Both the position numbers and the translations under genes were made by a program. DNA of 64,000 bases from Macrostomum lignano. Taxonomy: Eukaryota. Of the stretch, positions 1 through 62,677 are shown piece by piece. The stretch covers positions 62,001 through 126,000 of the forward strand of contig NIVC01002409.1 of assembly GCA_002269645.1 (NCBI GenBank). The letters are read 5' to 3'. Under the pieces are notes generated by a model that saw nothing but the letters and a program-made list of their open reading frames with translations, made no database searches and was not told where the DNA came from. Every line of letters begins with the position of its first letter. Positions within the stretch are counted from its first letter, which is position 1.

Positions 1-478
1 GGTGTACATCGATATGTAGTCAACGATATTAACACAAAATTAGGCTAGTGAAAACTACTTCTAGTAGGTGAAATTGCGTATATTTACATAAAAAGTAGAT
101 AAAACGTATCAGTATGTGTAAATATCGGTGCATAATGCATATTACCCGCCTGGCCAAGTGGTCCGGCTTTTCATCCGGTTTTGGTCCGTATCGTCCAGTT
201 TTTATGCCTTTACCGGACTACCGGACCAATTCGTCCGGTTATCGTCCGGTTTCGAAGTCCGGGTGAAAAACCGGACAAAAACCGGTCAAAAACCGGATGA
301 ATTTTTACTCCGGAATCATACCGGACGAAAAACGGACGAATTCGGCCCAGTTCCGGATGTAGGGACCTGTTTTGATCCGAATTTTTGTCCGGTTTCCATC
401 CGGAAACTTGTCCGGTCCTAATCGGACAATTAAGCGGACAAAATCCAGATGGAAACCGGACTAAATCTTGCGAGATCA

Positions 479-917
479 GTAAGTAAGCCTTCACAGTCTT
501 CACAGTCTACGAAGTGTACTTTTTAGTTATGCATCATACGTACAGGATTCGCTTTAACTCCGCCAATGCCGGTCCCAAGCCCGGTTGAAAAAGGAGGAGG
601 GTTTGGGGAGACGGTCTCTCCAGTAGAAGCCATCTTTCGTATCTAATTTATTATGAAGCTGAATATGAACTTCAATTTATACAGCAATTATCTGGCTACA
701 ATATATGACACTACCTCATGTGTAGGACTACCTCAAGTGTAGGAAAGCAAACAATTAGTTTCGCTATGATAGGTATCTTGGAGGTATCTTTACTGTGTCT
801 CCAGTAATCTTATAGATAACACTGTCCAATGACCCATACTATGATACCATTGATGATGAGCACTATATGTACTCTGAAAAACACGACTAACCTTAGCTCC
901 CCAAACTTGCATTGCAG
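479..917 (+). other. Predicted 5'-UTR intron of the transposase gene, containing the twister ribozyme
   Basis: Donor GTAAGT at 479-484 (alternative GTAAGC at 483), branch point GACTAAC at 885-891, acceptor TTGCAG ending at 917, 27 nt upstream of ATG 944. Confidence 0.6.
550..606 (+). ncRNA. Twister self-cleaving ribozyme (P1 type)
   Basis: UAA-CUCC-GCC-AAU-GCCGG-UCCC-AAGC-CCGG-UUGAAAAA-GGAG-GAGGG (555-601) matches the twister core as I recall it from the rice twister (UAACACUGCCAAUGCCGGUCCCAAGCCCGGAUAAAAGUGGAGGG). P2 is covaried (CUCC 558-561/GGAG 593-596), P4 is CCGG 569-572/581-584, and both pseudoknot partners are intact. P1 is weak. Predicted cleavage between U555 and A556. Confidence 0.88.
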
Positions 918-943
918 CCCGCACCTAGTGGTTGTCCGTGTCC

Positions 944-3900
944 ATGCAGCCCTCAGGACGCAACCGGCGGCAGTATATGCAGCAGCGAAGGTTCGAGCAG
1001 AAGCTAAAAGCTGCCATAAGTAAGGGTCAGCCGTCGCTTTCCCACTCCCCAATTCAACGCGATTCTGCAACTCTGCAGACCCACGAGCCGAAACCCTCTG
1101 GCAGCGTTAATCGTACGGCAGGTATGTACTGTTCATCGAATACATCACATGGCTGCAACGAGAGAAAGTGTTACTTTTTACTACTTCTTTCAATTCCTTA
1201 TACCTTCTCGGGACAGGCGATGGCATTGTCGCGGCAGCCAGCGCCAGCGTCGACGAAGCCGACAGCGACACTGACAGCTACGCCAGCAGTGGCGCGGCGC
1301 CCCAGGGCAGCGGCGACGAAGCCGACAGCGACACTGACAGCTACGCCAGTGGTGCTGCGCCCCAGGGCAGCGGCGACGAAGCCGACAGCGACACTGACAG
1401 CTACGCCAGTGGTGCTGCGCCCCAGGGCAGCGGCGACGAAGCCGACAGCGACACTGACAGCTACGCCAGTGGTGCTGCGCCCCAGGGCAGCGGCGACGAA
1501 GCCAACAGCGACACTGAACACTGACAGCTACGCCAGTGGTGCTGCGCCCCAGGGCAGCGGCGACGAAGCCAACAGCGACACTGACAGCTACGCCAGTGGT
1601 GCTGCGCCCCAGGGCAGCGGCGACGAAGCCAACAGCGACACTGACAGCTACGCCAGTGGTGCTGCGCCCCAGGGCAACGGCGACCAGGCCGACATCGACG
1701 CCAGCGGCGCTGCGTCCCAGGGCAGCGGCGACGAGGCCAACAGCGACGCCAGCGGCGCTGTGCCGCCAAACTTCGACCTCTTCCAGCACCCATGGCACGA
1801 TGGGGTACTGGCTGAGCCCATATACTCCATAGCGCCTGCCATTTGTGAGGTCAATGACTGCGCTATTGACCTGCAGATTCCCCGTGAAAAAGTCGGCCGG
1901 CTTTTGGCTACCATCCATCGCCTCGTCCCCGGCAACAGGTTGCCGCGGACGGCGAAGACGTTGTGGCGGAATATGAAAAAGGCCCAAAGTTGCATCGGCT
2001 CCTCAAAGTGCATGACTGTGTGCAATTCCTGTCGATGTAACTATCCAGGAGACAGCAGCCAGAATGAAGGACTTTGTCGGAACTGCAATTCTCAACTTGT
2101 CTCAAATTTCTGGGTGTTCGATATCCGTCAGCAAATTAGGACTTACATCGAGGCCTGTGGATTGCTGCAGAATGTCACCTTTCCCGTGGACTTCCAACAA
2201 CCGGAGGATTGCATTCACTTCTCAACCAGCCAAATGTATGCCGAGTTTATTGAGGCGATTGAACCCCAGGATCGAATGGACTTGTCCTACACCCTGAGCT
2301 CGGATGGCTTCTCGCTGCATACTACCAGCCGAGTTGAAGTCTGCCCCGTGTACATCAGCATCAACGAAGTCCACGACCGCTTCAAACTGAAGTATGTCGT
2401 CATTTGTGGTGTATGGGCGGGAAAGAAGAAATTGCACGCGTCTGCCTTCCTTCCTTGTCTCATCGGCGCGTTGAATAACCTGCGCACGCGAGGCGTCACC
2501 TACTTAGACGACGAATCTGTGCGACGGACAATCCGGTTTCATTCGCTTCAGACCCTCTTCGACGCACCCGCTCGGGCCGACGCTCTGAATATGAGGCACT
2601 GTACGGCCACTTACGGTTGCGACAAGTGCTACATTGCCACACGTCTGCACCCATCCGGCAGTGGTCGCTACTACGACGTGGAGATTACTCCCGCAATGCT
2701 GAACGAAGCCGCCCGTCTCGGTTGTGTGCAGACCGTCGTACGCAGCATGACCGACACGTCTCATCTTGCTGAACTGCATCTGCAACGGATACCTTCTGAT
2801 CCGAACGGCGACGTCCTTGGAGTCCGCGGTCATTCTCCCCTTGGCGAAATTCTCGGATTTTACTTCGTTCGAGGCTGTCCGCCGTGTTACCTGCATCAGC
2901 TCAACGTCGGTCTATGCAAAATGAAGATGCTGCAGTTTTTTTCTGTTCGGCGCGACAAGCCTGACCGTGGCCCAGTGTCCGGATTTACACGCGAGGCAGT
3001 ACCAAGTAGACGCCCGACTGCGGAATCTTTACGTGCCCGATTGCGTGCAGCGGCATTCCGTTCGTCCGCTCAGTGACCTACGCAATATGCGCGGTCACGA
3101 GTTTGAAATGTGGCTCCTCGCTTACGGGCCACTCGTTCTTGACGGAATTCTACCAAAGGCCCATATGGACCACTTCAAGGTCCTCTCTTCCGCTGTATTT
3201 TGGATGACGGCTGACTATGCGCCCAAAACCGAATTGCGACACGTGGAAATTTCCCTGCGGCATTACCACGCGAACTTGCAGCGTCTGTTTTCGCTACGGG
3301 CTCTCACCTACAATGCACATCAGGTGTGCTGCCACATGCTGGCCTATGTGCACCTCGCTGGATCCGCGCATCGCCTATCGACTGGCCTCTTTGAAACCAT
3401 GCACAACCGTTTGGCGCAACGTCTTCATGGGACCCGCCGCAGCGATGTCGAATTGGTGAATGCTGTTGAGCGCCAGATCGGCAGCATCCAAGCGAGAGCA
3501 CGACTCCTAGGCCGGCAAGTTCCACGGCAGCAGGATGAGCGGGACCTGCGCCGCTTTGAGATCCACACCGTCGGGGGCGCTGTCCTTCGCAGGCCGAAGT
3601 CTCAACAAGTTGGCTGGCAAACCGTCTCGCTGCTGTCTGGCTGGAAAGTCAGCGCGTATCGGCCTGCAGGCGCCAGGAGAGACGCGGCCTGCTTTGCGGC
3701 TGTCGCCGACCAAACGTCCCCAACAGAGTTCCGATTCTGTCGGGTAGCCTCCATCGACGTGGAAGGTGACATCGTCGTGCTGAAGATCATCGTGCTGCCC
3801 CTGATGCAACCCGAGCCGGACCCACTGGAGTCGCTGGCCCAAGTTCCTGCAGCCTCGGTAAATCGTGGCTGCCGCTTCGTCCACGTTAGGCGACTGGGCT

Positions 3901-4025
3901 GTGACCCATTCGGTGACCTACGCATTGAACCGGTCGCCGTGCGACTCGAGGCGCTTCGTGGGGTCTGCGGTCTGCATGGCCGCAAAATTGCCTTGTTGCC
4001 CCATCCGCAATTGTGCTTCGCGTGA
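944..4025 (+). pseudogene. EnSpm/CACTA DDE transposase, frameshifted in this copy
   Basis: Family motifs SDG (D at 2303), CPVYISINE, ICGVWAGKK, FDAPARA..N......YGCDKC (D at 2561), YLHQL..GLCK, LLAYGPLVL, TYNAHQ..H and GLFE. Model: 944-1121, intron 1122-1216 (GTATGT..ACAG), 1217-4025, with a 7-bp duplication (ACACTGA, 1511-1524) and a +1 shift near 3001-3008. Confidence 0.88.
1252..1760 (+). repeat. 60-bp coding tandem repeat (DEADSDTDSYASGAAPQGSG) in the transposase N-terminus
   Basis: About 7 near-identical units plus shorter degenerate units. Confidence 0.9.
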
Positions 4026-4647
4026 ACATTAACTGCTTCGATGCTTCGTTTGTAACTTCTGTTTCAATACATGTCCGTTTATTTATATTATGCTACGCTA
4101 GGTAAGCATAAGCAATTCAATAAGACAGGGATTTAACTCGTGTAGAACATATTCTGCTTGTTTTGCTGTATTATATTATGTATGCGTGCCGTACTAATAA
4201 TAATAAAATTTATCAAAAAAGACACTAATTTTGGTTGTACACTATTGCGTTGACTTCAATTATTAATGTAGATTTATCAAACATGGGTCTAATTGTAGGA
4301 GCATTAAAACTTATGGCAGAATTTTTTGTTGAAATTTGTTATAAAAACTCAATCGGATGCTTTCGTAAAAATCAGGTGCTAGAAAAATCGTACTCAAAGC
4401 CATTTTGATCCCAGCGAGTAAGGCTACTCGTAAGTGAAAGTTGAAGATCTTAGTAGACTGTTTAAATAACGGCATTTACATTTATGGCTGTGTATAGATA
4501 CAATGTGTAAGACCTGTCTGGGAAGCAAATGTAGTTTGATGGCTTGCTTAATTAAGGGTTATTTTTAAACGACGACCAAACGTAGTTTGAGCCCCTATTA
4601 AAATTGATGAGCGCCGAAATCCACACGCCTCACGCCTTTGCAGCTGC

Positions 4648-5488
4648 ATGGCAACTGGGCATTCTGGGCATTTCCCGTCATGGGCGGCCGGACGAAGCGA
4701 TACCCAGTCTATGCCTCTAGCAGATCTTCGATCCTGCATCCAAGAAGCCGAACAACGAGGCGTGCGCGTGTACACGAGTACTCGTAGTCTGCTACTCTTC
4801 GTGGAGGCACTGAACGTGATCGACTCAGGTTGGCTGGCTACAAGGCACTGTTTCCGACGAGACCTCATCAATTAATGCTTTAATTAACGCGCCGGCCTGC
4901 CAGACGTTTCCAGATATTCAAAAAGGAGCGACATTTCTTCTTGAGAGCCCAACACTTTTCAATGTCGACTCCGATTTGCACGGTCGCTACTCGTTGTCTA
5001 TCGCACCAGGGCAGATTCGACGCGTATATCCGCGCCCAGTGGTGGGTAATTCATTTATGTTCCGGTTTGCTTCCATCAATGCGTCGTTTCAGTCAGTCAA
5101 ATCACTTCAGTCAAACTCGCGGCACTTATTAGTTTATTTATTTATTCGCACGCACGCCAATATTATGGTCTGCACCGTCACATACTTACCACTGCAGGAA
5201 GCCACGTTCGTGAGCTATTACGGACCCGAGTCGAGCAGCTACCGTGACTACACGATCGTGTCCACAGAGGAACTTCCGACTAGTCGTCGACCATGTCAAC
5301 TCGGTTCGCCACCACCATCCAAAACGCCTGACAACGGGTCCCAAGAAAGCACCGAATGGAACATGTTTGACACCCAGTCTGAGTCCCAGTCTGCGCTGGA
5401 GGTGCCGGCATCTGCAGTCTTGGAGTGCGTCTGCGGCCAAGGCAATTTCCTCGGCTGCACTTGGTGCAGGCGACATGCTAAGAAGTAG
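4648..5488 (+). pseudogene. Transposon accessory gene: HROB/DUF4539-like OB-fold protein with a C-terminal Cys cluster, frameshifted
   Basis: Removing the TGGC duplication (4831-4838) gives LLLFVEALNVIDSGWLQGTVSDETSSINALINAPACQTFPDIQKGATFLLESPTLFNV..RYSLSIAPGQIRRVYP. By eye this aligns with the human HROB OB fold as recalled (FKDPTGEMQGTVH..LKPGSVLLL..YLNVTPNNLVHIY). Probable intron ~5042-5197. Ends CVCGQGNFLGCTWC. Confidence 0.55.
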
Positions 5489-5941
5489 AAAGTTTTACAG
5501 TAGAAACTATTTGGCGGTCTATTATATCCTAACGTATAGTTTGGTTGCCGAATTGCATTTTCTGCATTGCAGTTCTTCTGTCAAGTTGTGGCTTACCCTG
5601 ATAATTATTAAAGCTGACATCATTATTGAGAGAACTGCTGAGTTCTCTATTCGTGAAAATAATTGTGTCTATTTTTCTTTGCTTTTAATACTGTTTTAAG
5701 TTTCCATAGAAAGGCTTATGCGCTCCTCTCCTCTCCTCTCTCCTGTCTCCTATATCCTCTCGATCCTCTCTCCTATCCTCTCTCCCTAGCTCTCCTCTCT
5801 TCTCCTCTCCGCCATCCGCCATCCGTTACGGACAGTTCGCTTTCGTATTCAATTCAGTTGCATTAAGTCAGTTAAGTCAGCCACAGAAATTTTTACAGAA
5901 TGTACATCACAAAACGTTTCCCGCAGCACAACTGCATCGTT

Positions 5942-7931
5942 ATGGGCCACTTAAGTAAATCCAAAGAAAAAAATAAAAAACAAAGTGAAAAAAACGAAGC
6001 GAAAAGTCTAATTCGAAACGGACAACGCAGGCCACCGTCACCAAAAGGCGAAAACTGGAAGCGGCTGCTGGTTCCGCTGCTGCTTCGACAGAGCCGCCGA
6101 CCTCGGGCTCTACTGTACGTGCTGCTGGTTCCGCTGCTGCTTCGACAGAGCCGCCGACCTCGGGCTCTACTGTACGTGCTGCTGGTTCCGCTGCTGCTTC
6201 GACAGAGCCGCCGACCTCGGGCTCTACTGTACGTGCTGCTGGTTCCGCTGCTGCTTCGACAGAGCCGCCGACCTCGGGCTCTACTGTACGTGCTGCTGGT
6301 TCCGCTGCTGCTTCGACAGAGCCGCCGACCTCGGGCTCTACTGTACGTGCTGCTGGTTCCGCTACTTCTGCATACTTGCAGTACGACTGCGTGCCGTACA
6401 AAACAGAGGGTACGAGGAGATTCTTTTTATTCAAATATTCCAACTATCACGAGAAAACCGATGTGGTCTCCACGGACGACATTGTCGGCCGCAAACGCGA
6501 TTCGTCAATACCCGTCGCTGTGGGCAGCGAAGTTCTTATAATCAAGGCTAAAGTCAATAGAACTGCGGCCAAAAAGTGGCATGGCACCCTGGTGCAGGGG
6601 CCATTCACAGAAAGGAATGCAGCCGCACGTGCAGCTTCGTTAACTAATGTTCACACCACGAGTGTCGAGCTGCCAAGGACTTGTGGCTCCTGCCGCAGCT
6701 TTTCTGTCGAAGTCCAGCGCCAGTTGGCGCCAATAGAAACTTTACGTGAGTAAATTTTTACGTTTTTAGGCATACATACACCCTAAGCCAGGATCCTCAA
6801 CAGGACAATTCCCGCATATTTATAGGGGGACAGCTAAAATCGGCGACTCAGAAGGAGACCCAGCTGCGCGAAGATAATCAGTCGCTGACGGAGCAGCTTT
6901 GCGTATCCAGCAGAATGGAAAAAAGTCTGCTGCGCCAGTTGGAGGCAGAGCAGCGGCGCAGCACTAGATTGGTAGAAGCTGCGCAGCGCAGCAACTCGCT
7001 GCTTCTCAAATCGTCGGACATCCTCTGCCACGCCACGTCCGGCCGGGTAAAGTCCGGTACCAGTCAGTCCCTGACTGATCGGGAAACTTCTGAGTCAAGC
7101 ATGCAGAGGGGAGGAGCCGTTGGTGCAGCGGCGTGTGCCCATCAACAAGACGAAGATGAGGCCGATGAGGTCGATGAGGATCTCAGTTTCACATGCGAAC
7201 AGAATCTGTCTGTTGCACAGACTCGTGCGCTGCTGACTGCAAGCCAGAAGGCAGCAAACTGTTCGGAGACCTCGTCCTCGTCCGGCTACGTGTCGCTCTC
7301 AGAGACGCAGCCGTTCGTCAAGGTGCAATTTCAGCGGCGCGCGGATCTTCAAAGGCGACTGGAAGAATTCGGAAAGGTGCCAGCCCCGTCCGATGCGGAG
7401 CACGCAGATGTCACGTTCATTCGTGCAACGGCCCTGCAGGCCCTCCTCCGCGCTCTGCTGCGCACTATGTTCACGGACGAACAATTTGCTAGTTCTAGCA
7501 TATCGGGTCGCAACTCAGAGGTGGCAAACCCAGGAAAGATGGCTGCGGTGAGAGTCTGGCTGGCCGAGAACAAAATTAGCTACACGCAAGCCAATCTAAA
7601 CAGGGCGTTCAATCGTTGCAGTGATACGGCTAAAGACCACCTCGGCATCTCGGGTATCAAAAAGCGTGCAGCTATGTCCGTCCCAATGCGGTCCAAGAAG
7701 CCCGGTACAGGTGCCGCTGCAACGAAGCGCTCAAAGAAGGCCGCCCAGAGCAGTGAGAGCACAGTTGTTGTCATCGTGGACGATCCCAGTAGCGCCAACC
7801 AGAACATCTATCCGTCTGCTTCGAATGCTACAGTTGCCAGTTCGGCCGATGCGAGCGCCGGCAGTTCGACAGCCAATTCCGGCAGTAGCGGCACTGTCGA
7901 TATGCTGCAGGAACTGTATTCGAATGATTGA
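5942..7931 (+). CDS. Transposon accessory gene: NLS + 19-aa repeats + coiled coil + BEN domain
   Basis: Model 5942-6745 + 6826-7931; intron 6746-6825 (GTGAGT..TATAG) keeps the frame. One -1 indel is needed in the A-runs at ~5988-6006. Features: KRRK NLS, coiled coil (QLREDNQSLTEQL..LLRQLEAEQRR) and BEN-like LLRALLRTMFTDEQFASSSISG..NPGKMAAVRVWL at ~7440-7630. Confidence 0.65.
6064..6366 (+). repeat. 57-bp coding tandem repeat (AAGSAAASTEPPTSGSTVR), about 5 copies
   Basis: Identical units read directly from the sequence. Confidence 0.9.
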
Positions 7932-9024
7932 CTGATTTTTATAGTTCAGACTTTCTTACTTTCCTACGTTTTGATCGTATGAGCAGGTTGAAGCAACGTT
8001 TTGAGGAGTGTGAATAAACGGAACGGGAGTCGACGTAAGATTGTTTCTTTTAGTGTTTTTAGTAATTCAATGGACAAATCTACAGTACAGGATATTGTGT
8101 TTCATGCGTTTAATTTGTTTCTTTGTGAACTATTTGTGAACTATGGCTACAGTAGTAGCAGCAGCAGCAGTAGTAAACAAAATCAGCATTCTGTCTTCCG
8201 GTTTTCGCCCGTTGTTGGTCCGCTTCTTCATCCGGTTCAGCTCCACATTCGCACTCGCCCGGTTTTCGCCCGCTTTTGGTCCGGCTGTTGGTCCGGGAAC
8301 CGCCCGGACGAACTACCAGGTGAAATTCCAGATGAGCACCGGGCGAAGCAACCGGACGAAGTCCTCAAAAAACATGTTCTCGTCCGGATTCCTAACCATT
8401 TGCGGACAAACGAGATACGAGAAAAATAAAATACATAACGCACCGGATGAAAACCGGCTGCAAAGCCGGATTTGCAGCCGGATGAAAAACCGGACCACTT
8501 GGCCAGGCGGGTTACGAAACATATAGTTGTACAGTCATAAGCATATGGGCAGCAAAAAACACACAATGTAGGTGCATATTATCGATATATTTGCAGAAAA
8601 GTAGGTGAAATATACAAAATAATACAAAGCAGGTATATATCGCTTATTAGTGTAGTAGGTGCTTGTAGATGCTAGTATAATAAAAACATAGGTTGACTCA
8701 TACGCACAATAGGGCTCTCCCAGGACAATAGTAAGAGATACGCCCCCGCATTCCTCCCCAGCGCCGCGACCAAGGGACCGCGGGCTGAGTAATGTTTCGA
8801 GGGGATCCCAATGTACAGTGCAGGCAGAGAGCTATTTTCCTACCCAAATGGGGTTTTTATTCAAGGGACCCCTCACCTAGTACAGTGCGGGCAGAGAGGA
8901 GTAACAGAGAGCAATAGAGACCGCCCCATGTACAATGCGCTCCAGGGTTGAGGTGTCAAATGGGAGTTTTTGATCCCCCGCCCCAATGTACAGTGCGCTC
9001 CAGGGTGTCAAATGGGAGTTATGA

Positions 9025-9753
9025 GTGTCCCCTCACGGATACAGAGACTGCACAAGCAGAGTGCATTCCTCCCCAGGGCTTCCAAACGATAGTTATGAAG
9101 GACCCCTCACCAAGTACGGTGCGGGCGGGGTAACACGCCCCGGGGGGGAACCCCACGCGATCCTTATCGCTCACTCGCGAAAGCCATACGGACGGCTGGC
9201 GGCCCCATACACCCTCTTAGTCATGGAAGTGTGGAAGGACGGCTTCCCAGCAATCTATTTGAGCGAGCCAGAGTGGAAGAAGCTCGAAGCTTTGCGCCCT
9301 GACCTGGAGGCTGCCGCCCGCCTTCACGTGGACAAGCGGGTCGTGCTGGGCAATTTCAAGGCGGTCGAAGCTTCACGGGGGCGGATTCGTTTGCGGCGCA
9401 ATTGGCTCAATCGGGATCCAAAGTTTAATTGGCGCTACATGATCGAATTCACGCCGGAACTGTGGCACCGGATGCTTGCGGCCGGTTTAGACAAGCTCTT
9501 CAAGCCGGCACCCGAGGCCCCGCCGCCGGCAAAGCGAGCCAAGACAGAGACCCCTCCAGTAGCCAGGACTGAGGAGGAAAATCTCCAGGACGTTCTCCAC
9601 GACTCCAGGTTGTGGGTCTCAAGCCCTACCAATCCCCGCCCTGGGAAAATCTGTTTGACAAGAGTCAGCGCTGGTAGTTTCCTATTGGCTCACACCACCC
9701 CGCGGGGCCCCTATATAACTAATCTGTCCTGTCTTCAGAGAGCCAGGCCCTAA
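9025..9753 (+). CDS. PC4/Sub1-like ssDNA-binding protein (possibly tandem PC4 domains) in the outer element
   Basis: VVLGNFKAVEASRGRIRLRRNWLNRD..IEFTPELWHRM resembles PC4 (IGKMRYVSV..IDIREYW..GISLNPEQW). An upstream AIYLSEPEWKKL is a second half-motif. PAKRAK NLS. Start uncertain (ATG 9223 possible). Confidence 0.6.
   Translation: MSPHGYRDCTSRVHSSPGLPNDSYEGPLTKYGAGGVTRPGGEPHAILIAHSRKPYGRLAAPYTLLVMEVWKDGFPAIYLSEPEWKKLEALRPDLEAAARLHVDKRVVLGNFKAVEASRGRIRLRRNWLNRDPKFNWRYMIEFTPELWHRMLAAGLDKLFKPAPEAPPPAKRAKTETPPVARTEEENLQDVLHDSRLWVSSPTNPRPGKICLTRVSAGSFLLAHTTPRGPYITNLSCLQRARP
9629..9718 (+). promoter_or_regulatory. Pol II promoter-like cluster inside the outer element
   Basis: CCAAT 9629-9633, GC box CCCCGCCC 9634-9641, reverse CCAAT 9684-9688, TATATAA 9712-9718, then a CT-rich leader and CAACATG at 9798-9804. 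Confidence 0.45.
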
Positions 9754-9960
9754 TTCCTAGCTCTGATACTATACTCTCTCTCTCTCTCTGTTGATTCCAA
9801 CATGTCCCGCCGAGCTCTATCCACCCTCTGGGATAATAATCGCCCCCCCCCCTGAAGAGTTAACCTCCCTCGACGGTGAAATACCCGAACATATAATCCC
9901 CTAGGCACAGAAAACAACGGAACTGATAATTAGGGGGCTGATATATCCTTGGCTTGGGCT

Positions 9961-10779
9961 ATGTGGGCTATGACCTATGATAGCGACACTGAGTCTGAAG
10001 TTTTCGACCTCCCGCTGCTGACTATCGGAGGGGTTGTGAACGGTGCCCCTGCTGCTGCCGCCTCTGATTTGACCGCTGCATCTGCCGCCCTCTTTGAGGT
10101 CTCTGTTGATGAGCTGACCACTGCTGCGACCGTCTCTGCCTCTGCTGCCTCCACTGTTGTCTCGTCTGCTGCCGTCTCTGCCTCTGCTGCCTCCACTGTT
10201 GTCTCGTCTGCTGCCGTCTCTGCCTCTGCTGTCTCCACTGTTGTCTCGTCTGCTGCCGTCTCTGCCTCTGCTGCCTCCACTGTTGTCTCGTCTGCTGCCG
10301 TCTCTGCCTCTGCTGCCTCCACTGTTGTCTCGTCTGCTGCCGTCTCTGCCTCTGCTGCCTCCACTGTTGTCTCGTCTGCTGCCGTCTCTGCCTCTGCTGC
10401 CTCCACTGTTGTCTCGTCTGCTGCCGTCTCTGCCTCTGCTGCCTCCACTGTTGTCTCGTCTGCTGCCGTCTCTGCCTCTGCTGCGCCCGTCTCTGCCTCT
10501 CGCCTGGCCTCAATATCATCAGCCGCTTCGCTCCTTCTCTTTGACGATGAGGACGAGGATATGTCCGGGGAGATCGCCATGGTTCGTGAGCGCCTTCCCC
10601 GCATTGTGGCCTCATTTTTCCGCGGGGACATTGACTGGCTGAGGTCTCGCCACCCCGGCGGCCTGCCCTCCCAAGACACCTTTGTCAGAGCCTTTAATCG
10701 GGTTCTCGATACCTTGGTGTCGAGGGGGCTGGTCTACGGGAGGTGTTGGAGGCGGAGACGTTACACCAGGATTGGTTAA
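9961..10779 (+). CDS. Orphan ORF with a 42-bp Ala/Ser/Val repeat and basic C-terminus
   Basis: Open frame; about 8 copies of ASAASTVVSSAAVS (10130-10490); unique C-terminus ending RCWRRRRYTRIG. No family recognised. Confidence 0.4.
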   Translation: MWAMTYDSDTESEVFDLPLLTIGGVVNGAPAAAASDLTAASAALFEVSVDELTTAATVSASAASTVVSSAAVSASAASTVVSSAAVSASAVSTVVSSAAVSASAASTVVSSAAVSASAASTVVSSAAVSASAASTVVSSAAVSASAASTVVSSAAVSASAASTVVSSAAVSASAAPVSASRLASISSAASLLLFDDEDEDMSGEIAMVRERLPRIVASFFRGDIDWLRSRHPGGLPSQDTFVRAFNRVLDTLVSRGLVYGRCWRRRRYTRIG

Positions 10780-11287: not shown

Positions 11288-12049
11288 AGTTTGACTGGAA
11301 TTCTGTATGTGGTCTGTTACTCTACCTCCACTGTACATTGGGGCGGGATCCCTTGAATAAAAACATGGGGAGGAATGGAATTTCTCTATGTTACTCCTCT
11401 CTGCCCGCACTGTACTAGGTGAGGGGTCATTGGGGCGGGGGATCAAAAACTCCCATTTGACACTTCAACCCCGGAGCGCATTGTACATGGGGCGGTCTCT
11501 ATTGCTCTCTGTTACTCCTCTCTGCTCGCACTGTACTAGGTGAGGGGTCCCTTGAATAAAAACCCCATTTGGGTAGGAAAATAGCTCTCTGCCTGCACTG
11601 TACATTTTGGGATCCCCTCGAAACATTACTCAGCCCGCGGTCCCTTGGTCGCGGCGCTGTGGAGGAATGCGGGGGCGTATCTCTTACTATTGTCCTGGGG
11701 GAGCCCTATTGTGCGTATGAGTCAACCTATGTTTTACATTATACTAGCATCTACAAGCACCTACTACACTAATAAGCGATATGTACCTGCTTTGTATTAT
11801 TTTGTATATTTCACCTACTTTTCTGCCAATATATCGATAATATACATTACATTGTGTTTTTTACTGCCCATATGCTTATGACTGTACACCTATATGCGTA
11901 TTTCGTAATATGCATTATGCACCGATATTTACACATACTGATACGTTTTATCTACTTTTTATATAAATATACGCAATTTCACCTACTATAAGTAGTTTTC
12001 ACTAGCCTAATTTTGTGTTAATATCGTTTACTACATATCGATGTACACC

Positions 12050-12850
12050 CATATCGGAAGAGTGTACACTCGTATCGGGAGAGTGTACCTTTGGCTCGGG
12101 AGGGTGTACCTTTGGGGCGCCTGCAGCATACATATCGGGAGGGTCGCCTGCGGCATACATGTCGGGGTACATATCGGGAGGGTGTACATATCGGGGTACA
12201 TACATAGGTACCGACGACCTGAAGAGACGACGAGGACTGGCCTGGGCCGCATTTTGATCTGTGCGCTCCGTGCTCCAATCTGAGGCCCTGGACGACGGGC
12301 TCAAGGCTCGGCTGTTTCAGACAGTCGTCGAGACTGTCCTGTTGTACAACGCCGAGACTTGGACCCTGACGGACGCCTTGGAGAGGCAGCTGGACGCTGC
12401 GCATGCGGCAATGCTGCGTGCGGCTTTCGGAGTGCGCAGCGGCCCAGGCAGCGAGACCAATGCCGCGCTCTACACTAGGGCACGCCTGATGCGGCCTTCT
12501 GACCTGCTGCGCGGGCGGCGACTTCAACTGGCTGGCCATGTCATCCGGTCGGAGGCCCGCTGTCCTGAGCCGCTACACGACATGCTGCTGCTCAAGCTGC
12601 AGGGACCGCGGAGGCGAGGCCAAGGGCGAACGGTGCGATACCCTGACCGACTTCTGAGTGACGCTGGCGCCCCGGACCAAGCAGGGGGATGCGACTTCCT
12701 GAAGGCAATGGCCCACAGACGCGCTTTCTGACTGCTCCCCCCTTTCTGGCTACTGCGTGGCCGGCGGGAGCAGTACCTTGTTGTTGTTGTTGTTATATAT
12801 ATCGGGAGGGTCGCCTGCGGCTCGGGAGGGTGTACATATCGGGAGGGTGC
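12050..12850. repeat. TCGGGAGGGTGTAC-type subterminal repeat array, split by the LINE insertion
   Basis: About 10 related copies at 12050-12205 and 12796-12850. Confidence 0.7.
12207..12794 (+). mobile_element. 5'-truncated RTE-clade LINE fragment (RT C-terminal region, 3' UTR, (TTG)n tail)
   Basis: DDLKRRRGLAWAAF* / ETVLLYNAETWTLT / RRLQLAGHVIR are typical of the region downstream of RTE reverse transcriptase. In-frame TGA near 12255; stop at 12731; TTG tail at 12778-12794. No convincing TSD. Confidence 0.8.
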
Positions 12851-16251: not shown

Positions 16252-17481
16252 ATGTACCTCGCAAGCCCTCTGCTGATGCTGCTGTGCGCTTGGCTGCTGA
16301 GTTCGGCTTTGTCGGCTGCTACAGGGACAACACAGATGATGCCAGGGACCTCGACGGACTGAACGGCATGTCCTCCATCGGGCCCTACGCGGTGAACACA
16401 GTTGAAAATTGTGTGAACAGGGACGACATGACACTGCAGCTGTGCAGCCAGATCTGCGAGCTGGGCAACTTCAAGTACTTCGGCGCGCAGTACAGCAGCG
16501 AGTGCTTCTGTGGAAACTCGTACGGCAGCCAGGGCGGTGCTCCAGTGAGCGACTGCAGCATGAACTGCGCTGGCAACGCTGGCCAGATCTGCGGCTCGGG
16601 AGACCGAAATTCGGTTTACCAGCAGTTTAACTACCGTCCCAGTGAGCTTTCTTGGCTTTGTTTTGCATTTTTAACAAGGGGGTATTTTTGGAGTATTATA
16701 TCCGGTGCTTCAAAAGTAATGAGCCCCCCGATTAGAAAACTCCCTTCCGCAGCAGATATAAAAAGCAAACTTATCCATATGGCAGCTGAACATCAACCAA
16801 ACATGCAGGTCAATTTTCAGCCCTTAAACTCTTAGCAACAGGTATGGCCTTGTTTAGGCGTTTGTGGCCTAACTGTAATCAGGCACAATGATAGATTATT
16901 CTGAGGTAAGGCTTCGCCTCGGCCTAGAAACGCATCCTCAGCCATTCTATACGCCATAGAAACAAATTTGGGGGGGGGGTGTTATCCTATACTTGAACCT
17001 AAGTGTAGCTCAGCCAGGTGATCCCAAATCTCAAGCAGCTGAGCAAATCTACTTGACTTTCTGATACAAACAGAAAATGAGTCACAATTAGCGCGCTCCA
17101 GTAAAAATAAGGGACGATTCCAGACACTGATAGAAGCGGACACTCAGCGAGAGATTGAGGATCCATAGCATATCCATATCCATAGCAATGCTCACTCTAG
17201 CTCTGGTGCTTGGCTGAGTTCAGATGCACTGCGTTTTGCTCATTGCAGTCGGCAACAAGTTCGTCACAGCTCCCCGCGTCTACATGAACGCGACCTCATC
17301 CGGCGGGCCCTTCTACCGCACCGTGCAGCCAACTAAAAGCCCCATTCAGTGCCTGTCGCTTTGCCGGTCCAGCTGCCAGGCTGTCCTGTTCCACCTGGGC
17401 ACCTGCTACCTGCTGAAACTGCCGGCTCTGCCGCAGCAGCTGGTCGGCATTCAGGGCGGGAAGTTCTTTGTCCGTGGCTAA
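16252..17481 (+). CDS. Secreted WSC-domain + PAN/apple-like protein
   Basis: Exon 16252-16641: signal peptide MYLASPLLMLL, a 1-nt indel at ~16282-16284, then WSC FVGCYRD..MTLQLCSQIC..YFGAQYSSECFCG..CSMNCAGNAGQICGSGDRNSVY. Phase-1 intron 16642-17248. Exon 17249-17481 with SPIQCLSLCRSSCQAVLF..CYL. Confidence 0.75.
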
Positions 17482-26928: not shown

Positions 26929-28413
26929 AACTCATACTATTAAAACTTGACCTAGTAGAAACAATCAAAGTATAATCATAATCACAAAGCTATAGACAGT
27001 CATAGTCATCGTCATGCATTTATGCATTATACAACAAAAGATGTAGCCATACCATACGTCCATAGCTATATAGGCCTACAATGACAAAAAATAAAATAAT
27101 ATACTAATCAATGCATGCAGATAAAGAGTGAAGTAAGCAGTATAGTACATAGCATTATATTATATACTCTTATAGTCGATTACGATTAAAATTACAGCTG
27201 CCAGTTGTCTTTAATTTGTGTAGTTGTAGTATAATATATATAAGAAACTGTTCCGGACTCTGGTCACGTGTTTTATTACCTACATGCGTCCAAGACACTC
27301 CCATGTGTCCTTCACTTATATAAGGCCAAACTTTCAATAGGGGTTATCTCAATGTCTTACTCTTATCAAAACCAAAGTACGTACGTAAAGTTATTGGCAC
27401 TAGCACTGGCACATAATTTTCCACGTATCGTGGAAAAAATATAGAGTTAAAAAAGTCCTTACCAATTCTAAAAAGTAACAGTTAATTTCAAATTTAATAA
27501 ATTATACTTTCAAAAATAAATAAACATACAAAATTTTTATTAAATAATAAAAACGGTTTTTTATTTTTTGTAGCCGTTGAGCTATACTTTATTTGTTATA
27601 TTTTCTTATCCTGTTTTTAAACGGGTTTTAAACATTAAAAAGAGTCCTGGTTTAAACATTAAACGATAAATTTCCATTATCGTGGCTTGTATGTATTTTT
27701 AAACGAAGAATTGCATTTTTTTCGTGAGAAACCTTGGTTTGAAATTATTAATTTGTCGTTATGTGCAATGACTTTTTGGTTTAGAAAATTTTCTAAAACT
27801 AATTATTTTTAGTTTATCAGTTTTAGTAAACCGAGTATTTTAGTACATACTAATATACTGTAATACTAATACATAGCTATGCTATACACTTACTCAGAAC
27901 TGTCTACTTGGCTCCTATTCAAGAGTTTCGAATTAGAAATGCAGCATTTGACAATTAAGGTTTTTAATTTTGAAAATACATTTTGTAGCAATATTTCTCA
28001 TAGCATATTTAACAACCAAAAGATTAAATTTATTGTGTTGTGCCAGTTTAATTTTACTTTTATATTTGATTTTGTACTTTTATTTTTCATTTTTTTGCCG
28101 CAATAATATTATTGTTATAACTGTTTATATGGACTTATAAAAATCATTCTTAGACCTAGAACTTTTTAATAGTTTTTTGGGCTCAAAAAGTTATTGAAAT
28201 GCAATCAAAACAGATTTTTTTGTTCAATTAATTAGTGTTATAAGTATTGGGATAATGCTTGTACTGACAATATTTTGCACTATTAAAAGATCTAATCCTT
28301 TGATTTAATGTTATGAAACTTTAGTGTCATATAAATTAAGTGAAAAGTGACAATTGCTGTTTTGGCATATTTTAGTAGTGATTTTTAATTCCTGCATGAG
28401 GCATAGCCATGAT

Positions 28414-44148: not shown

Positions 44149-45249
44149 TCACGCGTACGACCTGAGCTCCGTGAAGACGTCGATGAAAAAGGCCGGGTCG
44201 GAGTTGAGCCGCAGCATGTCGGCGCTGCGCAGGTTGGCCAGGCTGATGCATCGATCCCAGAATGCCGCCCGGTTGCCGTCCACCAGGAAGGGCTTGAGCG
44301 GGTAGCTGATCTCGTTGCCCATGTAGGAGTAGGCCACGTACAGGCAGGTGAGCAGCGTGGCCTGCAGCTGCCGCTCCGAGGCGATGTCGGCTGGCACAGC
44401 CGCCTTCACCAGCAGGTAGAAGAACACGAGGTTCGGCGGGTTCACGAAGGCCATGTCCGCCCAGCCCTGCAGGATGAGGTTGCGGTCCACAGAGCGGATC
44501 CAGGACACCACGGAGCCGGAGTCGCAGTGGAGCTCGGAGCAGTGCTGGCGCAGGAAGGCCGCCACGCACTTCAGCAGATCCGAGGTGCTCGCCTGCACCA
44601 GCAGCCGCCGGCTGTCGGAGGCGCCGGACCGGCCGGTGTTCTCCTTGTCGCCTTCCGGCGTCACGCCGGCAGCGGCCGCGGCGGCGGTGCCAGCCGAAGC
44701 TGAGGCAGCGGCGGCGCCTGCAGCCGAAGCTTTGATGGCGTAGCAGGAGGTGGACTTGGTGAGGCCGGAGCGGCTCTGCTGCGACTTGCAAGGGGCCGCC
44801 GGCAGCTGCAGTTGTTGCTGCTGCGGCTGCAGCAGGTGGCCTCCGTGGTGATGATGATGATGAGGCTGGGGATTCTGCGCCCCGCCATCATGGGACCAGT
44901 TGGAAATCGTGGCTATGGACGATGGCGGCAGCAGCTGGTGAGGCTGCTGGGGCTGCTGGGGCTGCTGCTTGCCCGCCAGCTGCTGCTGCTGCGCTGCCGT
45001 CTTGTCCTTCCGCCTGCCGAAGCCGGCCTGCCCGATGCTGAGGTTGCGGAAGCTGATGGAGCTCGGCAGGCCGGATCTGAACAAGCCGCTCGAGTGTCCG
45101 GAATTGGCTGAACTACCCCCGGCCAGGGAGGCCCGGTCAGTCTTGAGGCTGAAGGTGGACTTGGAGGTGCGCAGCTGCTGGCCCCATCCGCTGCCACCGT
45201 TGATGCCGTTGGGCGGCCCGTCTCGGGGCGAGGAGAGCGCCGTGCCCAT
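44149..45249 (-). CDS. CDK5R1: Cyclin-dependent kinase 5 activator (p35/p39 family), single exon
   Basis: N-terminal MGT myristoylation-type start; C-terminal QASTSDLLKC, WIRSVDRNLILQGW, FVNPPNLVFFYLL, LTCLYVAYSYMGNEISYPLKPFLV, FWDRC, FTELR. Confidence 0.93.
   Translation of the reverse strand: MGTALSSPRDGPPNGINGGSGWGQQLRTSKSTFSLKTDRASLAGGSSANSGHSSGLFRSGLPSSISFRNLSIGQAGFGRRKDKTAAQQQQLAGKQQPQQPQQPHQLLPPSSIATISNWSHDGGAQNPQPHHHHHHGGHLLQPQQQQLQLPAAPCKSQQSRSGLTKSTSCYAIKASAAGAAAASASAGTAAAAAAGVTPEGDKENTGRSGASDSRRLLVQASTSDLLKCVAAFLRQHCSELHCDSGSVVSWIRSVDRNLILQGWADMAFVNPPNLVFFYLLVKAAVPADIASERQLQATLLTCLYVAYSYMGNEISYPLKPFLVDGNRAAFWDRCISLANLRSADMLRLNSDPAFFIDVFTELRSYA

Positions 45250-57416: not shown

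Positions 57417-62677
<5,261 letters not shown>

What the first reader, a model, noticed from the sequence alone, without database searches (positions are those of the whole stretch)
145..8511. Three-gene animal EnSpm/CACTA transposon: transposase + OB-fold protein + BEN-domain protein
Seen: between intact TIRs, three co-oriented, intron-containing genes. Known: plant CACTA elements pair the transposase TnpD with TnpA, which binds the subterminal repeats. Inference: here a BEN protein (sequence-specific DNA binding/repression) and a HROB-like OB fold (ssDNA/HR factor) may replace or extend that accessory role, giving a transposase/end-binder/repair-modulator module plus a ribozyme. I do not recognise this combination as described.
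Basis: partly seen in the sequence, partly recalled or inferred. Interest (0 to 1): 0.85.

Follow-up and report, generated by a model that had tools for sequence, protein, structure and literature searches.

The report
CACTA-like animal transposon with BEN-domain gene
This is a real, recently inserted but broken copy of an animal "cut-and-paste" transposon whose small family always carries a second gene for a BEN-type DNA-binding protein, whereas the supposed third "OB-fold" gene is found only in this copy and is weakly supported.

Summary
Window 145-8511 is a discrete DNA transposon. It has 34/35 matching terminal inverted repeats and a 3-bp TTA target duplication. An uninterrupted paralogous empty site lies 3.4 kb away. 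The transposase has the DDE, C(2)C and H(4)H signature of the CACTA/Mirage/Chapaev (CMC) group, and its next-closest relatives are Pfam Transposase_21 proteins. It belongs to a small, well-separated clade (Macrostomum lignano and metagenome contigs) with CCCG termini.

Gene 3 lies downstream of the transposase in all seven members examined. It encodes a small N-terminal domain, a CxxC motif, a coiled coil and a C-terminal domain. That domain matches solved BEN domains by profile-profile comparison (91% probability, P 9e-7). I propose it is the TnpA-like binder of the subterminal RTCCGGTT repeats.

Gene 2 (the "OB/HROB" gene) is absent from all six relatives and has no database homologues. It reaches only a sub-threshold Pfam HROB hit (E 0.0035), so the three-gene module is not a family trait.

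All three genes in this copy carry frame disruptions. A twister-like ribozyme (46 bits, below Rfam's cut-off) sits in the 5' leader of this copy only.

Verdict: a new variant of a known kind, of moderate interest.

The parts
142..144 (.). Left copy of the 3-bp target site duplication (TTA)
   Evidence: Sequence. The empty site GCATA-TTA-CGAAA at 11906-11908 carries a single TTA.
145..178 (+). Left terminal inverted repeat, beginning CCCGCC
   Evidence: 35-nt arms, 97% complementary. The terminus is unique to the two ends. CCCG termini are shared with L001 (CCCGCTG) and L002 (CCCGTTG).
145..478 (.). Left subterminal region with RTCCGGTT repeats in both orientations; probable promoter region
   Evidence: RTCCGGTWT gives 10 matches against 0.99 expected, 8 of them in the element's ends. 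RTCCGGTT gives 7 hits here. The same motif gives 17 matches against 0.57 expected in L001, all subterminal. The promoter role is inferred.
479..916 (+). Candidate 5'-UTR intron (donor GTAAGT at 479, acceptor ...TTGCATTGCAG at 916)
   Evidence: Sequence reading only; 42% GC against 56% in the exon. Inferred.
551..606 (+). Twister-P1-like self-cleaving ribozyme motif, lacking the optional hairpin and with a weak P1
   Evidence: Rfam RF03160: 46.2 bits, E 6.7e-8 (9 kb) and 4.7e-7 (64 kb), below the gathering score of 67.2; full model span 1-68. Absent from L001-L005.
944..4025 (+). Gene 1: CMC-type DDE transposase (exon 1 944-1124, intron 1125-1216, exon 2 1217-4025); frame-disrupted
   Evidence: 43% identity to P0001 and 33% to P0002 over 97-98% of the query. 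D (2303-2305), D (2561-2563), CxxC (2618-2629), Hx4H (3318-3335) and E (3393-3395) are invariant in alignment A2. The next-tier relatives hit Transposase_21 in 26 of 35 cases.
1245..1699 (+). 60-bp tandem repeat (7.4 copies) encoding an acidic Ser/Asp-rich stretch of the transposase N-terminus; a 7-bp duplication at 1511-1524 breaks the frame
   Evidence: TRF; three-frame translation.
2936..2942 (+). T7 run where the transposase reading frame shifts (a mutation or a homopolymer sequencing error)
   Evidence: The frame switches from 503 to 501 here. Removing one T restores ...LQFFLFGATSL..., which aligns with P0001 and P0002.
4609..5488 (+). Gene 2: orphan gene with a weakly HROB-like OB region (4762-5041), candidate intron 5042-5197 and a Cys-rich C-terminal tail; frame-disrupted near 4705 and 4830
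   Evidence: Pfam HROB E 0.0035, 17.7 bits (cut-off 30.8), profile positions 17-83 of 85; TPP1 OB E 0.16. No homologues. Exon GC 54-57% against 33-42% in the flanks.
5942..7931 (+). Gene 3: family-conserved accessory gene (exon 1 5942-6745, intron 6746-6825, exon 2 6826-7931). It encodes a Lys-rich NLS-like start, a 19-aa repeat, an N-terminal domain (6373-6745, ending in CxxC), a coiled coil and a BEN-like domain (7308-7679).
   Evidence: Homologues lie downstream of the transposase in L001-L005 and P0005. hhalign against solved BEN domains gives Prob 91.4%, P 9.1e-7, and the controls are negative. Pfam BEN E 0.0037. The coiled coil has pLDDT 80-94.
6064..6363 (+). Perfect 57-bp tandem repeat (5.3 copies, 100% matches) inside gene 3 exon 1
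   Evidence: TRF.
8191..8511 (.). Right subterminal region with CCGG-core repeats
8478..8511 (-). Right terminal inverted repeat
8512..8514 (.). Right copy of the target site duplication (TTA)
11906..11908 (-). Paralogous empty site (a single TTA) in the other arm of a ~620-bp inverted repeat
   Evidence: blastn of both flanks; three-way alignment.

Best explanation
Window 145-8511 is one nested, recently inserted but now defective copy of a cut-and-paste DNA transposon of the CMC (CACTA/EnSpm-Mirage-Chapaev) group. It belongs to a small, distinct animal clade.

Shown features of the clade:
- CCCG...CGGG termini.
- 3-bp target duplications.
- Arrays of short subterminal repeats.
- Two conserved genes: a DDE transposase, and downstream a protein with a small N-terminal domain, a CxxC motif, a coiled coil and a C-terminal BEN-type DNA-binding domain.

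Inferred mechanism:
- The transposase probably recognises and cuts the termini through its N-terminal CxxC...CxxC zinc ribbon.
- The BEN protein plays the part that TnpA plays in maize En/Spm. It binds the RTCCGGTT repeats at both ends, pairs the ends through its coiled coil, and probably also represses the promoter that lies within those repeats.

Gene 2 is a lineage-specific passenger or a recent addition. Its similarity to the HROB OB fold is weak, and it is not part of the family's core machinery.

A twister-like ribozyme in the sense strand of the 5' leader or intron is also specific to this lineage. If active, it would cut the transposase pre-mRNA and damp its expression.

This copy cannot make any of the three proteins as it reads: there are frame shifts in all three genes.
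For: - Discrete insertion: TIRs; TSD and empty site.
- CMC membership: D, D, CxxC, Hx4H and E are invariant across the window, P0001 and P0002. This is the pattern given for CMC/Transib/RAG1 in PMC12730594.
- The profile finds 8127 relatives. Of 35 next-tier relatives, 26 hit Pfam Transposase_21, 11 DUF1258 and 4 Plavaka.
- Distinct clade: full-length members score 586-1586 bits, and the next tier scores 221 or less.
- CCC termini are already reported for animal CACTA-like elements (PMC1636069).
- Second 3-bp TSD: AGT in L002.
- Gene 3 is conserved inside the TIRs of L001 and L002, and downstream of the transposase in L003, L004, L005 and P0005.
- BEN: hhalign Prob 91.4%, P 9.1e-7. The reversed control gives P 0.64, and the best of 30 column shuffles gives P 0.012. 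Pfam BEN is the recurring sub-threshold hit in four divergent members.
- Subterminal motifs: window 10 against 0.99 expected; L001 17 against 0.57, all subterminal; L002 uses a different motif, 6 against 0.03.
- Gene 2 is absent elsewhere.
Against: - No experiment or RNA data supports this. DNA binding by the BEN protein and its target motif are inferred by analogy with TnpA and with BEN-solo factors.
- The BEN call fails Pfam's gathering score in every member. The profile search of PDB sequences found nothing. The single-sequence AlphaFold model of the domain was of low confidence.
- The termini are CCC, not the CAC/CACTA usual for EnSpm and Chapaev.
- The window transposase itself reaches only DUF1258 at E 0.006 in Pfam.
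- L001 shows no clear TSD. A chimeric metagenome assembly is a possible cause.
- Only one copy from this genome is available, so recent activity and selection cannot be measured.
Confidence: 0.75

Rival explanations
1. This is a conserved three-protein module in which a transposase, a BEN end-binder and an HROB-like OB-fold ssDNA/repair factor act together, with the OB protein modulating repair of the excision gap.
For: - Gene 2 is GC-rich like the exons, sits between AT-rich spacers and has a plausible intron and poly(A) signal.
- Pfam HROB is its best hit (E 0.0035, nearly the full model), and a second OB family (TPP1) is the runner-up.
- L002 also has an extra ORF in the same slot.
Against: - Gene 2 has no counterpart in L001, L003, L004, L005 or P0005. 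L004 has only about 170 bp between the transposase and gene 3.
- ORF229 of L002 is unrelated (pairwise E 0.034 over 19 aa).
- There are no homologues anywhere.
- Gene 2 carries one or two frame shifts.
- The fold is not confirmed.
Confidence: 0.12
2. Gene 2 is a captured or transduplicated fragment of a host gene, possibly the host's HROB orthologue. It is carried as a passenger, as CACTA and Mutator elements often do, and has no role in transposition.
For: - It is lineage-specific.
- It is frame-disrupted.
- It sits between the two conserved genes, where L002 carries a different, unrelated ORF. That suggests a permissive slot for insertions.
Against: No host parent gene is visible in the window or in the protein database. 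The block has its own intron-like segment and poly(A) signal, which a functional gene would also have.
Confidence: 0.45
3. The BEN protein is not an end-binding transposition cofactor. It would instead be a regulator aimed at the host or at the element's chromatin: a repressor of transposase transcription, or a factor that targets or shields the element, using its N-terminal domain as a chromatin reader.
For: - Characterised BEN proteins are transcriptional repressors and insulator factors (established knowledge; see PMC11601247).
- TnpA itself doubles as a promoter repressor (PMC1636069 background).
- Gene 3 has an extra conserved N-terminal domain of unknown fold.
Against: Strict linkage with the transposase in 7 of 7 elements across about 30% protein identity argues for a role in the element's own life cycle. 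So does the coiled coil suited to pairing two ends, and so do the repeat arrays at both ends. The two roles are not exclusive.
Confidence: 0.3
4. The region is not a mobile element. It would be a host gene cluster that happens to lie between inverted repeats.
For: Only one copy is present in the window.
Against: The paralogous empty site has precise boundaries and a single TTA. Related TIR-bounded elements occur in other organisms. The transposase carries the catalytic signature.
Confidence: 0.01

Closest known systems
Maize En/Spm (CACTA) with TnpD transposase and TnpA subterminal-repeat-binding protein
   Same: - Transposase of the same superfamily (transitive link to Pfam Transposase_21).
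- 3-bp TSD.
- Arrays of short subterminal repeats in both orientations at both ends.
- A second element-encoded protein gene lying downstream of the transposase ORF.
   Different: - Termini are CCCG, not CACTA.
- The accessory protein is BEN-like with a coiled coil and has no detectable similarity to TnpA.
- The genes look like separate units with their own poly(A) signals. Alternative splicing from one promoter, as in En/Spm, is not excluded.
- The host is an animal.
Animal CACTA-like 'TRC' elements (SmTRC1 of Schistosoma mansoni, and Tribolium and Aedes elements; DeMarco et al. 2006, PMC1636069), classed today as CMC
   Same: Animal hosts, a Transposase_21-related transposase, TIRs starting with CCC, and internal tandem repeats.
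   Different: Those elements were described with 2-bp duplications and a single transposase ORF. The clade here has 3-bp TSDs, a conserved BEN-type second gene, and transposases that do not reach the Transposase_21 model directly.
Chapaev / Chapaev3 (CMC) transposons
   Same: 3-4 bp TSD. Chapaev3 uses TWA, and the window's TSD is TTA (PMC4079192). They share the CMC catalytic motifs and are widespread in invertebrates.
   Different: Chapaev termini are invariably CAC...GTG. L002's TSD is AGT, not TWA. No BEN gene is described for Chapaev.
PIF/Harbinger two-gene transposons (transposase plus Myb/SANT-like DNA-binding protein)
   Same: The logic is the same: a separate element-encoded DNA-binding protein is needed beside the transposase. 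The TSD is 3 bp, often TTA/TAA.
   Different: The transposase family is unrelated (DDE_Tnp_4). The DNA-binding domain differs (Myb/SANT rather than BEN).
BEN-solo DNA-binding factors (Drosophila Insensitive and Elba/Bsg25A; vertebrate BEND6, BANP, NACC1)
   Same: The C-terminal domain of gene 3 aligns with the signature LLxxLFxxEELxxxSxTG helix-loop and the following Pxxxxxxxx[IV]R helix of solved BEN domains.
   Different: Those are host genes, whereas this one is carried inside a transposon. This one also has a different N-terminal domain plus a coiled coil, and it is below the Pfam threshold.
HROB/MCM8IP OB-fold protein (Pfam PF15072)
   Same: Weak match across nearly the whole 85-position model (17.7 bits).
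   Different: The match is below the family cut-off, there are no supporting homologues, the fold is not confirmed, and no MCM8/9-binding motif was assessed.
Twister ribozymes in Schistosoma non-LTR retrotransposons (PMC8501958) and intronic self-cleaving ribozymes
   Same: A twister core (UAAC...GCC...GCCGGUCCCAAGCCCGG...GGAGGG) associated with a mobile element.
   Different: Here it lies in the leader of a DNA transposon, in one lineage only. It scores below Rfam's gathering score and has a weak P1.

Membership tests
CMC (CACTA/EnSpm-Mirage-Chapaev) DDE transposons | DDE catalytic triad in an RNase-H-like core | tested here: met
   D181 (SDGF), D267 (DAPARA) and E544 (LFET) are invariant in the three-sequence alignment. 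The corresponding D, D and E are nearly invariant (90% or more) in the 35-sequence alignment of relatives.
CMC (CACTA/EnSpm-Mirage-Chapaev) DDE transposons | [quoted passage not shown] | tested here: met
   C286-x2-C289 lies 19 residues after D267. H519-x4-H524 lies 20 residues before E544. All are invariant.
CMC (CACTA/EnSpm-Mirage-Chapaev) DDE transposons | Significant match to the family's curated profile (Pfam Transposase_21, DUF4218 or DUF1258) | tested here: not met
   The window protein reaches only DUF1258 at E 0.0057 (16.6 bits against a 33.1 cut-off). P0001 and P0002 have no hit. The link is transitive: 26 of 35 next-tier relatives hit Transposase_21.
CMC (CACTA/EnSpm-Mirage-Chapaev) DDE transposons | Short (2-5 bp) target site duplication | tested here: met
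   TTA, confirmed by the empty site; AGT in L002.
EnSpm/CACTA in the strict sense | 5'-CACTA (or CAC)...GTG-3' termini | tested here: not met
   Termini are CCCGCC...GGCGGG here, CCCGCTG in L001 and CCCGTTG in L002. CCC termini are reported for animal CACTA-like elements.
EnSpm/CACTA in the strict sense | Subterminal repeat arrays plus an element-encoded protein that binds them (TnpA) | tested here: inconclusive
   The repeat arrays are present and significant, and a conserved second protein is present. Binding was not tested, and there is no sequence similarity to TnpA.
BEN domain (PF10523) | Match to the curated profile at the gathering score | tested here: not met
   Window 17.9 bits against a 23.2 cut-off (E 0.0037); L002 E 0.06; L004 E 0.032; P0005 E 0.04.
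BEN domain (PF10523) | Profile-profile similarity to experimentally solved BEN domains across the signature helices | tested here: met
   The 7-sequence family profile was compared with Insv (4ix7), BEND6 (7yul), NACC1 (8yzs) and BANP (7yug): Prob 91.4%, P 9.1e-7, score 40.1. The reversed control scores 9.0, and 30 shuffles score 18.8 or less.
BEN domain (PF10523) | All-alpha BEN fold; sequence-specific DNA binding | tested here: inconclusive
   The single-sequence AlphaFold2 model predicts helices in the region but with pLDDT below 50. DNA binding cannot be tested with these tools.
HROB / DUF4539 OB fold (PF15072) | Match to the curated profile at the gathering score | tested here: not met
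   17.7 bits against a 30.8 cut-off, E 0.0035. No hit at all when the whole 226-aa protein was scanned.
HROB / DUF4539 OB fold (PF15072) | Five-stranded OB barrel | tested here: inconclusive
   The AlphaFold2 model has mean pLDDT 45. Its strand-strand-strand-helix-strand-strand order is compatible with an OB fold, but the Foldseek hits are meaningless (best E 0.9).
Twister ribozyme (RF03160, twister-P1) | Covariance-model score at or above Rfam's gathering score | tested here: not met
   46.2 bits against 67.2. E 4.7e-7 for the whole window, spanning the full model length. The optional hairpin is deleted, and non-standard pairs are flagged at the outer P1 stem.
Twister ribozyme (RF03160, twister-P1) | Self-cleavage activity | not testable with these tools
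   Needs an in vitro transcription and cleavage assay.

The most novel reading that the evidence does not exclude
An animal CMC clade has replaced (or never had) TnpA. It uses a coiled-coil BEN-domain protein as its subterminal-repeat-binding transposition cofactor. This would be a direct link between mobile elements and BEN DNA-binding domains. It would raise the possibility that some animal BEN-domain transcription and insulator factors are domesticated transposon proteins, as THAP, CGGBP1 and Myb-like NAIF1 are. In this host lineage the element additionally picked up an HROB-like OB-fold gene and an intronic twister ribozyme that throttles transposase mRNA.
Probability: 0.2. Interest if true: 0.75.

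Novelty: new variant of a known kind. Interest (0 to 1): 0.5.

Why it matters
Two-component DNA transposons (En/Spm TnpA/TnpD, Harbinger transposase plus Myb-like protein) are the best models for how elements recognise their own ends and regulate themselves. They are also a recurrent source of host transcription factors.

A CMC clade that invariably carries a BEN-domain protein would add a new pairing of transposase and DNA-binding domain. It would give BEN domains a mobile-element context in eukaryotes. It would also offer a testable protein-motif pair, the BEN domain against RTCCGGTT.

I found no paper in the searchable library linking BEN domains to eukaryotic DNA transposons. Repbase reports could not be searched.

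The OB-fold gene and the ribozyme are single-lineage curiosities until more copies are seen.

Tried and rejected
- Pfam on all raw and repaired ORFs gave only sub-threshold hits.
- Word-indexed homologue searches with the gene 3 alignment and with gene 2 gave no hits.
- JGI metagenome contig scans with the transposase alignment and with gene 2 found nothing.
- PDB sequence searches with the gene 3 whole-protein, BEN-region and N-domain profiles, and with the gene 2 OB region, found nothing useful. A recalled HROB-like consensus found no solved HROB OB domain to compare with.
- Single-sequence models of gene 2 (pLDDT 45) and gene 3 (only the coiled coil was confident) were too poor. Foldseek on the gene 2 model returned noise.
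- The MFE fold of the ribozyme region is uninformative, because the fold is pseudoknotted.
- A PIF/Harbinger reading (TTA duplication, two genes) was considered and rejected. The transposase has CMC motifs, and L002's TSD is AGT.
- ORF229 of L002 was considered as a gene 2 homologue and rejected.
- A nested origin of the 470-940 leader (ribozyme carried by another repeat) was considered. No other copy exists in the window, so this stays unresolved.
- Outgroup contigs L006 and L007 were too short to say much, though L006 shows no second gene.

Full report
**Observation**

The coordinates are right. An inverted-repeat search gives 35-nt arms at 144-178 and 8478-8512 with 97% complementarity. The 22-nt terminus CCCGCCTGGCCAAGTGGTCCGG occurs exactly twice in the 64-kb window, once on each strand at the two ends, against zero expected. 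The sequence immediately outside is TTA on both sides.

The strongest evidence came from the flanks. Bases 1-144 match the reverse complement of 11906-12049 at 97.9%. Bases 8512-8988 match the reverse complement of 11428-11908 at 95.5%. The two matches abut and share three bases. A three-way alignment shows the uninterrupted site GCATA-TTA-CGAAA.

So the element sits in one arm of a ~620-bp inverted repeat, and the other arm is a paralogous empty site. This fixes the insertion at 145-8511 with a 3-bp TTA duplication.

**Anatomy**

Three GC-rich blocks (54-59% GC) lie on the + strand. They are separated by AT-rich spacers (33-42% GC) that contain AATAAA or ATTAAA signals.

- **Gene 1** starts at ATG 944. 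The N-terminal motif RRQYMQQRR is shared with relatives. It has a 92-nt GT-AG intron (1125-1216) and then runs to the stop at 4023-4025.
- **Gene 2** occupies about 4609-5488, with a candidate 156-nt intron (5042-5197).
- **Gene 3** runs from ATG 5942 to the stop at 7929-7931, with an 80-nt intron (6746-6825).

None of the three is intact:
- A 7-bp tandem duplication (ACACTGA, 1511-1524) inside a 60-bp coding minisatellite breaks gene 1.
- A T7 run (2936-2942) breaks gene 1 again.
- Gene 2 needs one or two frame changes, near 4705 and 4830.
- Gene 3 needs one in an A-run near 5988-5994.

The homopolymer cases could be sequencing errors. The 7-bp duplication is not.

Both ends carry arrays of CCGG-core repeats. 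RTCCGGTWT occurs 10 times against 0.99 expected, and 8 of the 10 are in the terminal ~340 bp of the element.

**Transposase**

The repaired protein finds two proteins in the word-indexed search: P0001 (43% identity, marine metagenome) and P0002 (33%, Macrostomum lignano).

A profile of the three, run against 1.84 billion representatives, finds 8127 relatives at E 0.001 or better. There is a sharp gap. Full-length members of the close clade (P0001, P0003-P0006) score 586-1586 bits, and three fragments (P0007, P0008, P0010) score 245-371. Everything else scores 221 bits or less.

Of 35 sampled proteins (mostly next-tier), 26 match Pfam Transposase_21 (the En/Spm tnp2/TnpD family), 11 DUF1258, 4 Plavaka and 1 DUF4218. 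The window protein itself reaches only DUF1258 at E 0.006.

The alignment shows these residues as invariant: D (SDGF), D (DAPARA), C-x2-C nineteen residues later, H-x4-H, and an E twenty residues after that (LFET). This is the order and spacing given for CMC, Transib and RAG1 in PMC12730594.

The CCC terminus is atypical for EnSpm and Chapaev (CAC). It was, however, noted for animal CACTA-like elements of Schistosoma, Aedes and Tribolium in PMC1636069.

I therefore accept 'animal CMC/EnSpm-like transposon'. It is a separate clade, not a canonical CACTA or Chapaev element.

**Relatives and the accessory genes**

Genomic context was recovered for six relatives.

- **L001** (10.2-kb Tara Oceans contig) is a complete element. 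Its 33-nt TIRs begin CCCGCTG. The same RTCCGGTT motif occurs 17 times against 0.57 expected, always subterminal. It has an intact 863-aa transposase.
- **L002** (Macrostomum lignano) has TIRs beginning CCCGTTG, a 3-bp AGT duplication, and a different subterminal motif, GG(T/A)AACTTTTGG (6 against 0.03 expected).
- **L003, L004 and L005** came from looking up P0003, P0004 and P0006.

In every one, a homologue of gene 3 lies downstream of the transposase on the same strand:
- L001 7509-8237 plus 8575-9342.
- L002 14816-16225.
- L003 5097-6365.
- L004 2947-4419.
- L005 19103-20371. This was detected at E 5.8e-7 by a profile that did not include it.

The gene model P0005 fuses the two proteins.

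The architecture is conserved at 20-45% identity:
- an N-terminal ~100-aa domain ending in LLKGPF...A..A and CxxC;
- a coiled coil (pLDDT 80-94 in the single-sequence model);
- an acidic linker;
- a C-terminal domain with the pattern VPL...V.V...L.R.L.R.LFS.EEL...S.SGR...P....VR...C.

Gene 2, in contrast, has no counterpart in any relative. L004 has about 170 bp between the two conserved genes. L001's spacer is full of stops. L002 has an unrelated 229-aa ORF there.

**Is gene 3 a BEN protein?**

Pfam BEN is the recurring hit in four divergent members, but always below the 23.2-bit cut-off: E 0.0037, 0.06, 0.032 and 0.04. Profile searches of PDB sequences found nothing.

I then retrieved real BEN-domain sequences from solved structures: Insv 4ix7, BEND6 7yul, NACC1 8yzs and BANP 7yug. 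I used a recalled consensus only as bait. I compared their alignment with the family profile using hhalign.
- With five members: Prob 56%, P 1.1e-4.
- With six: 83%, P 8.8e-6.
- With seven: 91.4%, P 9.1e-7, score 40.1. This covers the signature helix-loop and the following helix, and extends over 89 columns at low stringency.

The reversed alignment scored 9.0 (P 0.64), and thirty column shuffles scored 18.8 or less. I take the BEN assignment as well supported by sequence, but structurally unconfirmed.

**Is gene 2 an OB-fold/HROB protein?**

The evidence is one Pfam hit of 17.7 bits (cut-off 30.8; E 0.0035) covering positions 17-83 of 85. TPP1's OB domain is a distant second. The hit disappears when the whole protein is scanned.

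- There are no homologues in either protein resource or in the metagenome scan.
- There is no PDB sequence hit.
- No solved HROB OB domain is available to compare with.
- The AlphaFold2 model has pLDDT 45, and its Foldseek matches are noise.

The call is possible, at perhaps 40-50%, but unproven. In any case the gene is not a family component.

**Mechanism**

Shown: a CMC transposase with an intact catalytic signature, defined ends, a 3-bp duplication, repeat arrays at both ends, and a strictly linked BEN-like coiled-coil protein.

Inferred, by analogy with En/Spm (TnpA binds subterminal repeats, pairs the ends and represses the promoter; background in PMC1636069) and with BEN-solo factors (sequence-specific binding):
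- The BEN protein binds the RTCCGGTT repeats, brings the ends together through its coiled coil and modulates the promoter embedded in the left repeats.
- The transposase, which has its own N-terminal CxxC...CxxC ribbon (weak DZR hits), cuts at the CCCG termini.

Two observations fit co-evolution of protein and site, but they are also what shared descent alone would give. The window and L001 share both the motif and the closer BEN sequence. Macrostomum has a different motif.

**Ribozyme**

Rfam's sensitive mode finds a twister-P1 match at 551-606 on the sense strand (46.2 bits, E 4.7e-7 for the whole window). It spans the whole model, with the optional hairpin deleted and a weak P1. It fails the gathering score of 67.2.

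It lies between the left repeats and the transposase ATG, inside what reads as a 5'-UTR intron (479-916). None of the five related loci has one. In the library, twister has been tied to non-LTR retrotransposons (PMC8501958), not to DNA transposons.

If active, it would sever the cap from the transposase message unless splicing wins. This is speculative.

**Novelty and verdict**

The element type is known, and the CCC-ended animal CACTA-like group is known. The consistent BEN-type second gene appears not to be described in the searchable literature; Repbase could not be consulted.

I rate it a new variant of a known kind. Interest is moderate because of the BEN-transposon link, and it is tempered by the single defective copy and the absence of functional data.

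Noticed in passing
window 551-606 (+): Twister-P1-like ribozyme core in the 5' leader or candidate intron of the transposase gene. It scores 46.2 bits (below Rfam's 67.2), is significant by E-value, lacks the optional hairpin and has a weak P1. It is present only in this lineage of the family.
   Followed up: partly
window 1-144 + 8512-8988 versus 11428-12049: The transposon is nested in one arm of a ~620-bp inverted repeat (96-98% identical arms). The repeat brackets ~2.4 kb holding ORFs 9025-9753 and 9949-10779 and a 42-bp minisatellite (10124-10500). This may be another mobile element with long inverted ends. The left arm runs off the window start.
   Followed up: partly
window ~12200-12400 (+): The translated sequence ...LFQTVVETVLLYNAETWTLTD... 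resembles the C-terminal part of non-LTR retrotransposon reverse transcriptases. This was seen by eye only.
   Followed up: no
window 28354-29943 (+), 44149-45249 (-), 59293-61651 (+), 16284-16835 (+): Host-gene-like ORFs read by eye: CNNM-type (DUF21/CBS) transporter, CDK5 activator p35-like, FAS1-domain exons and a WSC-like domain. They indicate a metazoan host. They were not profile-tested.
   Followed up: no
window 59867-60120, 60290-61230, and many other blocks (13.9-15.5 kb, 46-52 kb): Introns and spacers are packed with long micro- and minisatellites, e.g. (GTCA)n and about 70 copies of the 13-mer GGGATCCGGGTTC. These produce the strong skews in the composition profile. The coding minisatellites inside genes 1 and 3 of the transposon (60 bp x7.4; 57 bp x5.3, perfect) fit this genome-wide tendency.
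   Followed up: no
L002 12993-13682: The Macrostomum element carries an unrelated 229-aa ORF with a Gly/Ser/Arg-rich repeat in the same slot (between the transposase and the BEN gene) where the window has gene 2. This suggests the spacer tolerates lineage-specific additions.
   Followed up: partly
P0005 residues ~905-960: One family member's gene model fuses the transposase and the BEN-type protein. It has an extra Cys/His-rich stretch (CTFCGSWPPEFHCDRCPPVGQHTCDGCNTQFH) in place of the usual N-terminal domain. No contig was on record for it.
   Followed up: no
window 2027-2095 (transposase residues ~89-111 of the repaired protein): A conserved CxxC...CxxC pair lies upstream of the catalytic core, with weak double-zinc-ribbon hits in P0004 and P0006. 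It is a candidate TIR-binding module of the transposase.
   Followed up: no
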